Assembly: GCA_965649765.1 (NCBI GenBank)
Contig: OZ287750.1
Span: forward strand, 68,014,001-68,078,000
Direction: 5' to 3'
Length of the DNA stretch: 64,000 nucleotides
Source: Bispira polyomma
Taxonomy: Eukaryota
The notes beneath the pieces are model-generated. The model was given only the letters and a program-made list of their open reading frames with translations. It did not search any database and was not told the origin of the DNA. The first letter of the stretch is position 1, and each line of letters begins with the position of its first letter. A program made the position numbers and the translations under genes. Below, in pieces: positions 1,615 to 63,771 of the stretch.

Positions 1615-2153
1615 TTTAGAGTAGTATGACTTTCCTTTCTTTAGAGTAGTATGGCTTTCCTTTATTCAGAGTAGTATTGCTTTCCTTTATTTAGAGTAGT
1701 ATGACTTTCCTTTATTCAGAGTAGTATGACTTTCCTTTATTCAGAGTAGTATGGCTTTAGTTTATTTAGAGTAGTATGACTTTCCTTTCTTTAGAGTAGT
1801 ATGGCTTTCCTTTATTAAGAGTAGTAGTAGTATGGCTTTCCTTTATTCAGAGTAGTATGGCTTTCCTTTATTCAGAGTAGTATGGGTTTCCTTTATATAG
1901 AGTAGTATGACTTTTCTTTATTTAGAGTAGTATGACTTTCCTTTATTCAGAGTAGTATGGCTTTCCTTTATTCAGAGTAGTATGGCTTTCCTTTATTTAG
2001 AGTAGTATGACTTTCCTTTCTTTAGAGTAGTATGGCTTTCCTTTATTTAGAGTAGTATGACTTTCCTTTATTTAGAGTAGTATGACTTTCCTTTCTTTAG
2101 AGTAGTATGGCTTTCCTTTATTCAGAGTAGTATGACTTTCCTTTATTCAGAGT
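1615..2153 (+). repeat. 25-bp minisatellite (~21 copies, AGTAGTATGACTTTCCTTTATTCAG) ending in the EIPR1 acceptor
   Basis: Directly visible; the last unit supplies the acceptor at 2150 and the first exon bases AGT. Confidence 0.97.
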
Positions 2154-2250
2154 CCTCTGGCAGCCTTCAGGAGAGAGCAATGAAGTAATAACAGTCACTG
2201 ACAACCAGCTTATTTTGTGGGACCTACAAGTGTCTGAAACCAGTGTCAAG
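2151..2250 (+). CDS. EIPR1: EIPR1/TSSC1 internal coding exon (VLWQPSGESNEVITVTDNQLILWDLQVSETSVK)
   Basis: ttcag acceptor at 2150, gtgact donor at 2251. Translation resembles EIPR1 segment VVWEP...ILLWDLQ. Phase 0 joins the next exon. Upstream exons lie outside the window. Confidence 0.9.
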
Positions 2251-4326
2251 GTGACTAGTATCATCATATTTGTGAGGAATAAGGCAGAGTAGTAGTACAG
2301 TGGCTCTATGCTGACAGACTTTTTTGTGTACATTTACTAGGTTTAGTAAGCGTCAATGATTTTTGCATGATTATGCCAATGCTTATTGGCATAATCATGC
2401 TTTCCTGGAGAAAGGGGATAGTGGAAGAACTTTGGTTACGGATGGTTACAACGTGTCCACAGGGTAATCTATGAACCTGTAGGGAGTTGTGCTCTTAAAT
2501 TTGGTATATATATATATATTCACTTTTTTGTCTTTAGTTGGTCCAAAATTAATTTGGTGTGATTATATGCAGTATAGTAGAAGTTTTCAAGTTTTATATA
2601 TTGGGATCCTCAGATTTGATTGAAGGGTTCATTACAGCCCCTTTCAAATGGTTTCAAAAGGAATTTATAATTTACATGACAAACATTAGGTTTGGGAAGA
2701 TATATACTATATATATATACATACTTTGGTTAATGGGTGGTTGTGGATGTAAGGAATATAAAATTTGCCACCATATGAAATTTGCAACCTAGAAAATGTT
2801 GTGTTTTGGGTAGAATTGTGGTAAATATTTGCTTAAATTGATATTTTTGTGACTAATTTGCCTTCCTTACCAGTTATGTTTTGCCAGTTTTAAGTTATTT
2901 GGCTTAAATTTTAGGGGTGACGAAGTTTAGATACAGGAGCAAATTTTAGATTCCTTATCAAGCTGAAAAAAAAAATATATATAGTGAACCCAATATATTG
3001 CATACAGGTTAACTGGAGTATTTTAAAGGATAAAAATTACAGAAGCTATATGTGTCAAAATAGGAATAAACTATATGGGGTCAGAAATGGATGGTTTTTG
3101 ATGGCAGGAAATATTTTTTTTCGTTTAGTAACAATTATAATTGAACTAAGTGTACCAGTGTAGCGCTAAAAAAAGTGTGTGGGGATACAAAATATGGCAA
3201 GGGGGCTTGCCAAATTTTTGTATCCCCTTGCAAAATAATGTATCCCGTGGAAACAAATAAATTTATTCTCTGACTACTTATATATGTGTATTATTTTAAA
3301 ACTTATAAGCCATTTTAGCTGAGTGCTATTTTATTTACCTTTTGTGATTTAGATTATTAAAGGATTCAAGTAAGTGTGACTAAAATAATGAATCTATGTA
3401 TACCTTTTGTGATTTGTAAAATGTTTGTGCATAGAGCAGCGACAGTTTAGCAAAAAAAAAATCTGTAATTGGATTAAACATGGGCTTTGATTAGCAAGGA
3501 ATTAATTTAAGTGATAGATTTGTTTGGGGTGCTATAGTGGCTTCTGTACTGATGATTAGTACTTTCTTTTGTCTATAGGGATAGTAACTAGTGGTTCACT
3601 ATCTTCGGACTAATTTTGGACGTTTTGCAAGCTATAACAGCTAAAAATGAAAATATTAAAATTGGAAAATAAATTATGGTTTGGTCGTTTCGAGAGCTGT
3701 CAAAAAACCCAATAATTTTGTAGGTAAACAAACTAACTTTTGTGAGCAACCAAAATATATAAAAAATTGTTTTTGTCAGGTTCTAAAGCAAACTTATGTG
3801 AAAAATAAATTATCAAAACATTTTTTAAGGCGATTCGGTTGTTCATACATATGTTTCTGATTTTACTTTGAATTTTGTCTTTGGTTTACCTAACTGGGTA
3901 CCCACAGTAGATAGTTCTCGAAATCCATTTTGATCGCTGACTAGTGACTGGTTTATTATTTCCAGACTTGTCAGTAACTTGCTTTGTAGCGGCATTATTA
4001 TGATATGGCCGCCAGGCCATTCTCCTCTTGTTGTAGAAAAGCTACTAAATATTGACAGATTAAATACTAACTATATCTTTGCTTCATATTCATAACGATA
4101 CAGAAGTAAATGTTATGTGGTTGAGATAAGCAATGTATCCGGATTTTGGGTAGATTTAGGTCTTGCACAATTTCCCTGTCCAAATTGTCTGCACAATAAA
4201 AAAAAATAAAGCAAGAGTAAACATTTTTTCTTGTATATTTATTATATATTTTACAAATTTTGATACTTTTAAAACGGAAGCACTAGGATTAGGATAACCT
4301 TCAGTTTTGCTATCACTGTTCTACAG

Positions 4327-4463
4327 CAAGTGTCCTCCGCATGTGTGGAAGGTAAAGGTCAGCCCAAACTGACCACTGGTGCGTGGAGTCCTCACCACAA
4401 CTGTACACAAGTAGCTACAGCCAATGGTACCTGTGTGAGAGGCTGGGACCTTAGATCTATGAA
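4327..4463 (+). CDS. EIPR1: EIPR1/TSSC1 coding exon ([46 protein letters not shown])
   Basis: ctacag acceptor, AA|gtaagt donor. [23 protein letters not shown] motif typical of EIPR1. Confidence 0.95.
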
Positions 4464-5006
4464 GTAAGTCTGTCTCAGTACCTGTGTGAGAGGCTGGGAC
4501 CTTAGATCTATGAAGTAAGTGTGTGTCAGTACCTGTGTGAGAGGCTGAGACCTTAGATCTATGAAGTAAGTGTGTGTCAGTACCTGTGTGAGAGGCTGGG
4601 ACCTTAGATCTATAAAGTAAGTGTGTGTCAGTACCTGTGTGAGAGGCTGGGACCTTAGATCTATGAAGTAAGTCTGTCTCAGTACCTGTGTGGGAGGCTG
4701 GGACCTTAGATCTATGAAGTAAGTGTGTCTCAGTACCTGTGTGAGAGGCTGGGACCTTAGATCTATGAAGTAAGTGTGTCTTAGTACCTGTGTGAGAGGC
4801 TGGGACCTTAGATCTATGAAGTAAGTGTGTCTCAGTACCTGTGTGAGAGGCTGGGACCTTAGATCTATGAAGTAAGTGTGTCTCAGTACCTGTGTGAGAG
4901 GCTGGGACCTTAGATCTATGAAGTAAGTCAGTCTCAGTACCTGTGTGAGAGGCTGGGACCTTAGATCTATGAAGTAAGTGTGTCTTAGTACCTGTGTGAG
5001 AGGCTG
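4427..5006 (+). repeat. 51-bp minisatellite (11.4 copies): last 37 nt of the EIPR1 exon plus GTAAGT donor and intron start
   Basis: Directly visible; explains the spurious minus-strand ORF 4392..5066. Confidence 0.98.
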
Positions 5007-5273
5007 AATAATATTTTTGGTTGGTTTGTAGCTGTAGGGTTTACATTCAAAGTCATAAGTATACAACTGTCCTAAGCGATGTAAAATGTGTAATAATGAA
5101 AGTGATCAAGTCTGCCACCTTTGTTGTACAACTTCATGAAATGAAATAAAAAGAAGAAGTTTAGAATGAATAACTTATGAAGAGTAGAGGATACACTGAT
5201 CTGTAGTGTTTGTGTGGCTATTACCTTGTGTCAGATTATTTATCCAGCACTTATTATATTTCCTATGTTTCAG

Positions 5274-5441
5274 ACAAGCTTTTACTATAGAGAATGCACA
5301 TGGTCAGCTTGTTCGAGATCTGGATTTCAATCCCAATAAACAGTATTACGTGGCAACGTGTGGAGACGACTGTAAAGCCAAGTTTTGGGACATCCGTAAA
5401 GCCAGCACACCTCTTAAAGTCCTGTCAGATCACTCACACTG
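5274..5441 (+). CDS. EIPR1: EIPR1/TSSC1 coding exon ([56 protein letters not shown])
   Basis: tttcag acceptor, TG|gtgagt donor. Highly conserved WD40 repeat, in ORF 5206..5445. Confidence 0.96.
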
Positions 5442-62505: not shown

Positions 62506-62646
62506 ATGCCCCACACCAGGATGTGATGGTTCAGGTCATGTGACAGGAAACTACACATCTCATCGCAGTCTGTCGGGATGTCCCAGAGCACACAAGTCAA
62601 AGAGACAGATTCTCAAGGAGAGTGGCATAGAACCAGAACCTCTGAG
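62506..62646 (+). CDS. MYT1L: MYT1-family exon, zinc finger 5 ([47 protein letters not shown])
   Basis: atcag / AG|gtaagc; ORF 62444..62650. Confidence 0.95.
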
Positions 62647-62799
62647 GTAAGCTACTGCCAGGCAGAGTATGGGAAAAGGAGCTAGAACTTACAGAATTAC
62701 TGGTGTATTCAAATTTATACACATTTATCAACCTTTATGTAGGATACAAGGGGTTACTTAATTTGAAAGTGTGCAATCTGTAACAGTAACTGTCTTTGC

Positions 62800-63010
62800 C
62801 CTAACTAAAGAGAGGGGTTTGAGGATGACAATTTATCAATGTCTCCAATGATCTTTAGCCTGTCAATGGGGATTAGACCCAATGACAGAGGACCGCCATT
62901 TAATGTGGTCATCCAAGCCACTATGTATCTACCTGTACCTGGGAAACACATATTAGGATTGAACCCAGATCCTCTGCATTCCCAACCAAGTGTGTTTCCC
63001 ACTAGGCAAC
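62800..63010 (-). mobile_element. tRNA-derived SINE fragment
   Basis: Minus strand tRNA-like head (gggttcaatcc) followed by taaatggcggtcc body. Confidence 0.55.
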
Positions 63011-63137
63011 AATGAGATAAAATACACAGCTCTACTACAGGAACAGAAGCAGTTCACGTTTTACTTAGAAAGATGTGATTTATTCACCTTTTGATATTAA
63101 TGTTCTGGTCTTAATGGTTCGTATTGTCCTTTTCTAG

Positions 63138-63200
63138 GTGCCCTGTTCCTGGTTGCGATGGTTCAGGTCATATCACAGGGAAATATGTCTCACACCGCAG
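63138..63200 (+). CDS. MYT1L: MYT1-family exon, zinc finger 6 first part ([21 protein letters not shown])
   Basis: tttctag / CAG|gtaagg; CPVPGCDG..GHITGKY.SHRS motif. Confidence 0.95.
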
Positions 63201-63522
63201 GTAAGGAAACCAGCCAAATATCCCCACATTGCAAATTTGAATAATTTTATTTGAAAATTATTATCATAAACATCTGTGACATGTTAGCATAATACCAGAT
63301 CTTCAAACATCTGTTATTTGAATCTAATTCATGTGAGAAGGGCAAGAGTAAACTAGAACAATAAGATTACATTGAAATTATTATTCTGTTTCAATCAATT
63401 GCTGTAATTTAAATAGTGGTATGTGTAAATGATTGGGCTTTTGACGAATGCATTTACCGGGGGGTAATTGCTGTACACTTTCTTATGACTAGCTTTGTCC
63501 ATAGAAGATAAGACAGAAGTGT

Positions 63523-63771
63523 TGCTCACATATAGAGTACACAGGACCTGTTTCTTATTTCAGTGCTCACATATAGAGGACACAGGACCTGTTTCTTATT
63601 TCAGTGCTCACATATAGACTACACAGGACCTGTTTCTTATTTCAGTGCTCACATATAGAGTACACAGGACCTGTTTCTTATTTCAGTGCTCACATATAGA
63701 GTACACAGGACCTGTTTCTTATTTCAGTGCTCACATATAGAGTACACAGGACCTGTTTCTTATTTCAGTGC
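63523..63771 (+). repeat. 41-bp minisatellite (6 copies + TGC, TGCTCACATATAGAGTACACAGGACCTGTTTCTTATTTCAG) ending in acceptor 63768
   Basis: Directly visible; near-identical copies. Confidence 0.98.

What the first reader, a model, noticed from the sequence alone, without database searches (positions are those of the whole stretch)
1615..63771. Systematic tandem amplification of exon-intron junctions: minisatellites built from splice sites
Seen: six arrays of unrelated sequence (units 25, 51, 40, 44, 54, 41 bp) each contain the splice site of a confidently called coding exon, in two different genes: acceptors 2150, 16832, 48683, 60439, 63768 and donor 4464. Four more arrays abut candidate exons (16040, 28463, 33380, 36147), and two-copy duplications sit at 52949 and ~61868. 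Each unit is intron end + AG + 3-26 exon nt, or exon end + GT + intron start. The array always extends into the intron, so the functional site is the exon-proximal terminal unit. I found no long non-TE intronic minisatellite away from a real or candidate junction, although junctions are a tiny fraction of 64 kb. Inference: a mutational process targeted to splice junctions (e.g. repair or slippage linked to spliceosome pausing/R-loops), or selective retention, plus splicing that ignores dozens of near-identical decoy sites, implying strong exon definition. I do not know of this being described as a genome-wide system.
Basis: partly seen in the sequence, partly recalled or inferred. Interest (0 to 1): 0.95.

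Follow-up and report, generated by a model that had tools for sequence, protein, structure and literature searches.

The report
Splice-junction minisatellites ("mirages") genome-wide
In this invertebrate genome about one exon-intron boundary in seven to ten has been copied into the neighbouring intron as a tandem array; such repeats are known from single lancelet genes as "mirages", and here they are common and tend to end just past the splice site, which hints that they arise at splice sites.

Summary
The six core arrays are real and each spans a splice site of an intact gene: EIPR1/TSSC1 (2150, 4464, 16832) and a Myt1-type zinc-finger gene (48683, 60439, 63768). A seventh lies just past the window. 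Raw-read contigs support the two arrays tested. Relatives keep two of these exon starts with no array. Of the four candidate cases, 28463 holds, 33380 is unproven, 16040 is a dispersed repeat family and 36147 has no coding exon. The repeat type is known: amphioxus "mirage" minisatellites. In 33 independent myosin/ABC exons, 9 of 66 junctions were spanned (2.2 expected), and 22 of 30 arrays lay within 100 nt of an exon edge. The enrichment there is at donors (8/33); acceptors (1/33) show none, so the acceptor excess rests on this window. Units mostly lie upstream of the site and end just past it (9/16, P=0.007). Best reading: local duplications seeded preferentially at exon edges, expanded as ordinary minisatellites and tolerated by splicing. 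The trigger is inferred, and no RNA data were available. The scan already found this on other DNA of this genome.

The parts
1615..2153 (+). 25-bp x21 acceptor array (22 intron + 3 exon nt); a further 6.5 units lie about 4 kb upstream of it, outside the window
2151..2250 (+). EIPR1/TSSC1 exon 5
   Evidence: tblastn; frame
4327..4463 (+). EIPR1 exon 6
4427..5006 (+). 51-bp x11 donor array (37 exon + 14 intron nt); use of the next donor reads straight into a stop
5274..5441 (+). EIPR1 exon 7 (no array)
15209..15361 (+). EIPR1 exon 8 (no array)
15611..16048 (.). 31-bp x14 array of a dispersed repeat family; not a junction array
   Evidence: 11-nt candidate exon out of frame
16137..16836 (+). 40-bp x17 acceptor array (36 intron + 4 exon nt), locus-specific
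16833..17007 (+). EIPR1 last coding exon
28226..28463 (+). 51-bp x4 locus-specific array with a degenerate tail ending at the AG of the probable first coding exon of the Myt1-like gene (28464-28544)
   Evidence: exon supported by frame chain only
32114..33362 (.). 33-bp x38 locus-specific array ending 18 nt before an unproven exon (33381-33446)
36139..36744 (.). 41-bp x15 intronic array with no valid coding exon beside it; weak dispersed look-alikes
46746..48701 (+). 44-bp x about 43 acceptor array (26 intron + 18 exon nt) with a 336-bp higher-order duplication
   Evidence: absent in relative L009
48684..48794 (+). Myt1-like C2HC zinc-finger exon, 86% identical in the relative
52949..53167 (+). 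111-bp two-copy duplication abutting, not including, the donor GT at 52948
60159..60465 (+). 54-bp x5.7 acceptor array (28 intron + 26 exon nt); the adjacent decoy would add 18 codons in frame without a stop
   Evidence: absent in relative L078
60440..61340 (+). Myt1-like exon, 57% amino-acid identity in a relative with the same acceptor
63523..63771 (+). 41-bp x6 acceptor array (38 intron + 3 exon nt), units 98-100% alike
63769..63867 (+). Myt1-like exon

Best explanation
These are mirage-type minisatellites. Step 1 (biased location shown, cause inferred): a 25-85-nt tandem duplication arises preferentially at an exon edge, typically copying the stretch just upstream of a splice site and ending 0-10 nt past it. 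Step 2 (shown in part): the two-copy seed expands and turns over like any minisatellite by slippage or unequal exchange. Step 3 (inferred): only arrays that run into the intron survive, because the exon-proximal unit keeps the exon intact. Splicing uses that unit, and decoy use mostly gives frameshifts or stops removed by NMD. The arrays are lineage-specific, near-neutral by-products, not a regulatory system. For the trigger I favour a transcription- or splicing-linked lesion at exon edges over recombination stalling where homology ends, but only narrowly.
For: Independent myosin/ABC exons: 9/66 junctions spanned vs 2.2 expected (P=3e-4); donors 8/33 vs 3.1% (P=6e-6). 22/30 arrays within 100 nt of a known exon edge vs 25% expected (P=5e-8). 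26 arrays in 106 kb of intron-rich loci vs 2 in 112 kb around long single-ORF kinase hits. Polarity: 9/16 units in the subset not picked by exon echo have the site in their last quarter (P=0.007); 11/22 end within 10 nt of it (5.2 expected, P=0.005). Units are unrelated, and those tested are locus-specific. Arrays are absent at the orthologous exons in relatives. Turnover: 336-bp higher-order repeat, length variants, one array split by an insertion. Reading frames intact. Only 4/22 periods are multiples of 3 (P=0.1). Precedent that mirages leave splicing intact: PMC3087553, PMC3902484.
Against: Acceptor-spanning arrays were not enriched in the independent sample (1/33 central, 0/30 secondary), so the acceptor half of the polarity rests mostly on this window. 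Ten arrays abut junctions without containing them, so the target may be the exon neighbourhood, not the splice site. Samples are small, splice sites are predicted, and microhomology shifts donor breakpoints a few nt towards the observed bias. Most kinase control loci are copies of one family. No RNA data.
Confidence: 0.7

Rival explanations
1. No targeted origin: duplications arise anywhere, but seeds at exon edges are protected from deletion and decay, and GC-richer exon-edge sequence expands more readily.
For: Arrays are GC-richer than the window (most 0.40-0.50 vs 0.36). Many arrays abut without spanning. Copy number falls with period and tends to rise with exon content at donors.
Against: The peak is sharp: 8 array starts in the 70 nt before donors against 9 in the 1.4 kb beyond +100. 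Protecting one copy slows divergence about twofold at most (inference). Acceptor units are intron-rich, against a GC drive, and the 25-bp array is 32% GC.
Confidence: 0.2
2. Recombination at the homology edge: in a highly polymorphic species, exons are the homologous islands between haplotypes; repair synthesis stalls where homology ends and re-invades, duplicating the edge. Splicing is incidental. This is a variant of step 1 of the best explanation.
For: Mirages were first found in amphioxus, which is very polymorphic (own knowledge). Both spanning and abutting arrays are explained.
Against: It gives no reason for transcript-direction polarity. No arrays at four conserved non-coding edges (34911-35244, 37019-37177) or at the kinase ORF edges, though these controls are too few.
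Confidence: 0.25
3. Selected regulatory elements: decoy sites tune exon inclusion, NMD or protein length.
For: The human ABCA7 donor VNTR alters splicing (PMC5954066). The 54-bp array could add in-frame modules.
Against: Not conserved in relatives; unrelated units; no excess of in-frame periods; found in housekeeping-type genes alike.
Confidence: 0.07
4. Assembly artefact, or transposon-borne satellites landing near exons.
For: True for the 31-bp array. An exact 318-nt internal repeat in the 44-bp array was not checked in reads.
Against: Read-derived contigs support two arrays. Units differ from each other by 0-20%, contain the host exon's own sequence and occur once in the genome.
Confidence: 0.03

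Closest known systems
Amphioxus 'mirage' minisatellites (Adh3, globins BflGb6/9, TnC, PGBD5; PMC3087553, PMC3902484; first report Canestro 2002, doi 10.1093/nar/gkf386, not held, cited through PMC3087553)
   Same: Tandem repeats spanning exon-intron boundaries at both 5' and 3' sites, units of 10-160 bp carrying AG/GT, host gene intact.
   Different: Different animal lineage. Quantified here as about 10-14% of junctions with a breakpoint polarity; the papers found describe single loci and call the mechanism unclear.
Human ABCA7 intron-18 VNTR (PMC5954066)
   Same: 25-bp unit that contains the splice donor; tens to hundreds of decoy donors.
   Different: Single locus, no exon sequence in the unit; splicing effects shown there, untested here.
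Internal tandem repeats at exon-intron boundaries in human segmental duplications, and intron gain by tandem duplication (PMC2812944; Rogers model cited in PMC3087553)
   Same: Minisatellites at exon-intron boundaries that can supply new splice sites.
   Different: Those lie in young paralogs and create introns; here old conserved introns carry the arrays, and no new intron was shown.

Membership tests
Mirage minisatellite | Tandem unit spans an exon-intron boundary | tested here: met
Mirage minisatellite | Occurs at both donor and acceptor boundaries | tested here: met
   15 donor and 7 acceptor arrays
Mirage minisatellite | Minisatellite-size unit (10-160 bp reported) | tested here: met
   25-85 bp
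Mirage minisatellite | Derived from the local sequence, not a dispersed family | tested here: met
   25-, 40-, 33- and 51-bp (28226) arrays match only here; not met for the 31-bp array, which is excluded
Mirage minisatellite | Normal splicing is not disturbed | not testable with these tools
   no RNA run; reading frames intact
Mirage minisatellite | Copy-number variation between haplotypes or somatic instability | tested here: inconclusive
   contig runs show no differences and probably come from the assembled animal
Mirage minisatellite | Concerted turnover within the array | tested here: met
   higher-order 336-bp duplication and shared variant units
Transposon-borne dispersed satellite | Same unit at many loci | tested here: not met
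   junction arrays single-locus; met only by 15611-16048 and weakly by 36139-36744

The most novel reading that the evidence does not exclude
Splicing intermediates template the mutation. The free 3' end of the 5' exon (at donors) and of the lariat tail (at acceptors) re-anneal to the DNA and cause re-copying of the 20-65 nt just upstream of the cut. This would explain why both classes of unit end just past the splice site, and would be a splicing-coupled mutational process acting across an animal genome.
Probability: 0.15. Interest if true: 0.9.

Novelty: new member of a known kind. Interest (0 to 1): 0.5.

Why it matters
Mirages were anecdotes from a few lancelet genes with an unknown origin. 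A genome with arrays at roughly a tenth of its junctions should hold thousands of independent cases. That makes three questions directly testable: whether mutation is biased to splice sites, how the spliceosome picks one site among dozens of near-identical ones, and whether such arrays seed new introns or exons (the Rogers model). They also mislead gene prediction by making pseudo-exons and long false ORFs.

Tried and rejected
Pkinase search gave mostly single-ORF copies, used only as a rough control. No RNA run was found. No Rfam match. Species not identified: the mitochondrion uses the invertebrate code with cox1 next to cox2, and the atlas search was uninformative. 'Annelid' is taken from earlier scan notes and not verified. 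EIPR1 is no closer to Branchiostoma than to carp. The original mirage paper was not held. Microexon at 16041-16051, exon at 36078-36147 and a coding role for 33381-33446 were rejected or left unproven on frame grounds. Branch-point-like motifs near the start of acceptor units were noticed but are expected from unit length, so I did not count them as evidence. Three offsets were corrected.

Full report
Setting. The window is G000:C3:68014001-68078000 in a 1,035-Mb assembly of 75 contigs. It holds exons 5-9 of EIPR1/TSSC1 and most of a Myt1/St18-type C2HC zinc-finger gene. Both exon chains are frame-consistent, each with a single terminal stop where its last exon was checked. The species was not identified. 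The mitochondrion uses the invertebrate code and EIPR1 is no closer to Branchiostoma than to fish. Earlier scan notes call it an annelid, which I did not verify.

Observation. TRF recovers every array. Six span a real splice site in the exon-proximal unit: acceptors 2150, 16832, 48683, 60439, 63768 and donor 4464. A seventh (56 bp x16.6) spans the next Myt1 acceptor just outside the window. In the two genes 7 of 51 junctions are spanned against 0.63 expected (post hoc). Read-derived contigs break at the edges of the 60159 and 63523 arrays, with collapsed-unit depth about 2-5 times the flank, so these are in the raw DNA data, probably of the same animal. Orthologous Myt1 exons in relatives keep the acceptors at 48683 and 60439 with a single copy and no array; the first relative shows no junction array in 24 kb.

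The weaker cases. 28463 is plausible: the array is locus-specific and the exon fits the frame chain. The 31-bp array before 16040 belongs to a dispersed family of about 40 loci and its microexon is out of frame. The 36147 candidate has stops in all frames and its unit has weak look-alikes elsewhere. The 33-bp array is unique, but its candidate exon is open only in the wrong phase. The duplication at 52949 begins one base inside the intron.

Independent test. I took 33 non-redundant myosin and ABC-transporter exons found by profile search, predicted their splice sites and compared them with positions at least 300 nt away in the same loci. Nine of 66 junctions were spanned against 2.2 expected; donors 8/33 (P=6e-6), acceptors 1/33 (not enriched). 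With secondary exons, 12 of 126 junctions were spanned by arrays of three or more copies. Of 30 arrays, 22 lay within 100 nt of an exon edge (12 spanning, 10 abutting; P=5e-8), and two of the eight 'far' arrays visibly start in unannotated myosin exons. Loci around long single-ORF kinase hits held 2 arrays in 112 kb against 26 in 106 kb, a rough control because many are copies of one family.

Anatomy. Units are 25-85 nt and unrelated. The copied stretch tends to lie upstream of the splice site and to end just past it: exon end plus a few intron bases at donors, intron end plus a few exon bases at acceptors. Eleven of 22 end within 10 nt of the site (5.2 expected), and 9 of 16 in the subset not chosen by exon echo have it in the last quarter (P=0.007). 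An earlier scan note reported this for donors; the acceptor side is suggestive only (n=7, six from this locus). Arrays turn over: a 336-bp higher-order duplication in the 44-bp array, length-variant units, and a 25-bp array split by a 4-kb insertion. Only 4 of 22 periods are multiples of three. Use of the next donor at 4464 meets a stop at once; the 54-bp array is the exception, with an open in-frame decoy.

Mechanism. Shown: a sharp excess of locally derived arrays at exon edges, lineage-specific origin, minisatellite-like turnover and intact genes. Inferred: biased seeding, selection for arrays that run into the intron, and splicing at the proximal unit. The trigger is open. A transcription- or splicing-linked lesion fits the polarity; recombination stalling at the edge of exon homology fits the abutting arrays; simple protection of seeds near exons fits the sharpness of the peak poorly. 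Regulatory function has no support.

Prior knowledge. [quoted passage not shown] Human parallels are the ABCA7 donor VNTR (PMC5954066) and boundary repeats in segmental duplications (PMC2812944). My searches found no paper giving a genome-wide count or describing this outside chordates; the library is incomplete. The scan has already reported mirages on other DNA of this genome.

Verdict. Core observation confirmed, supporting cases trimmed, type known. The genome-wide scale in a non-chordate and the breakpoint polarity are what merit follow-up. Interest 0.5; new member of a known kind.

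Noticed in passing
L003:7651-10000 and window 1-1614: A 3,964-bp insertion splits the 25-bp array at a T run. 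It has a 10-bp subterminal inverted repeat, a hairpin near its right end (about 1586-1602) and an internal 145-bp satellite, like a Helentron/HINE element. A similar end lies near 13385.
   Followed up: partly
window 2151-63867: EIPR1 lies next to a Myt1-family gene, as EIPR1 and MYT1L do on human 2p25 (own knowledge): possible ancient microsynteny.
   Followed up: no
window 34911-35244 and 37019-37177: Non-coding blocks conserved in the relative's Myt1 locus (75% over 357 nt; 89% over 159 nt): candidate enhancers or an alternative promoter.
   Followed up: partly
window 48684-48701: Most 44-bp units and the relative carry T at a synonymous Cys-codon position where the live exon has C, so the array keeps the probable ancestral base.
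   Followed up: partly
window 41699-46413: A 4.7-kb single coding exon in the Myt1-like gene, with a coding 30-bp x21 repeat at 44776-45400; the exon is also present in the relative (L009), where no such repeat was found.
   Followed up: partly
window 60159-60465: The only array whose adjacent decoy acceptor is in frame and stop-free (18 residues, Cys-rich); the acceptor is also a tandem NAGNAG site.
   Followed up: partly
window 6720-9420 and 11180-12500: Stretches that look like inverted copies of each other within EIPR1 intron 7, probably a nested repeat element; seen by eye only.
   Followed up: no
L016-L036 (kinase search): About 20 dispersed copies of a 411-418-codon intronless kinase ORF on many chromosomes, possibly carried by a mobile element.
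   Followed up: no
L045, L046, L047: Three near-identical myosin exon copies on C11, C8 and C13; counted once.
   Followed up: no
L010: Divergent mitochondrial cox1 and cox2 separated by about 60 nt that folds like a tRNA but does not look like the trnN usual in annelids.
   Followed up: partly
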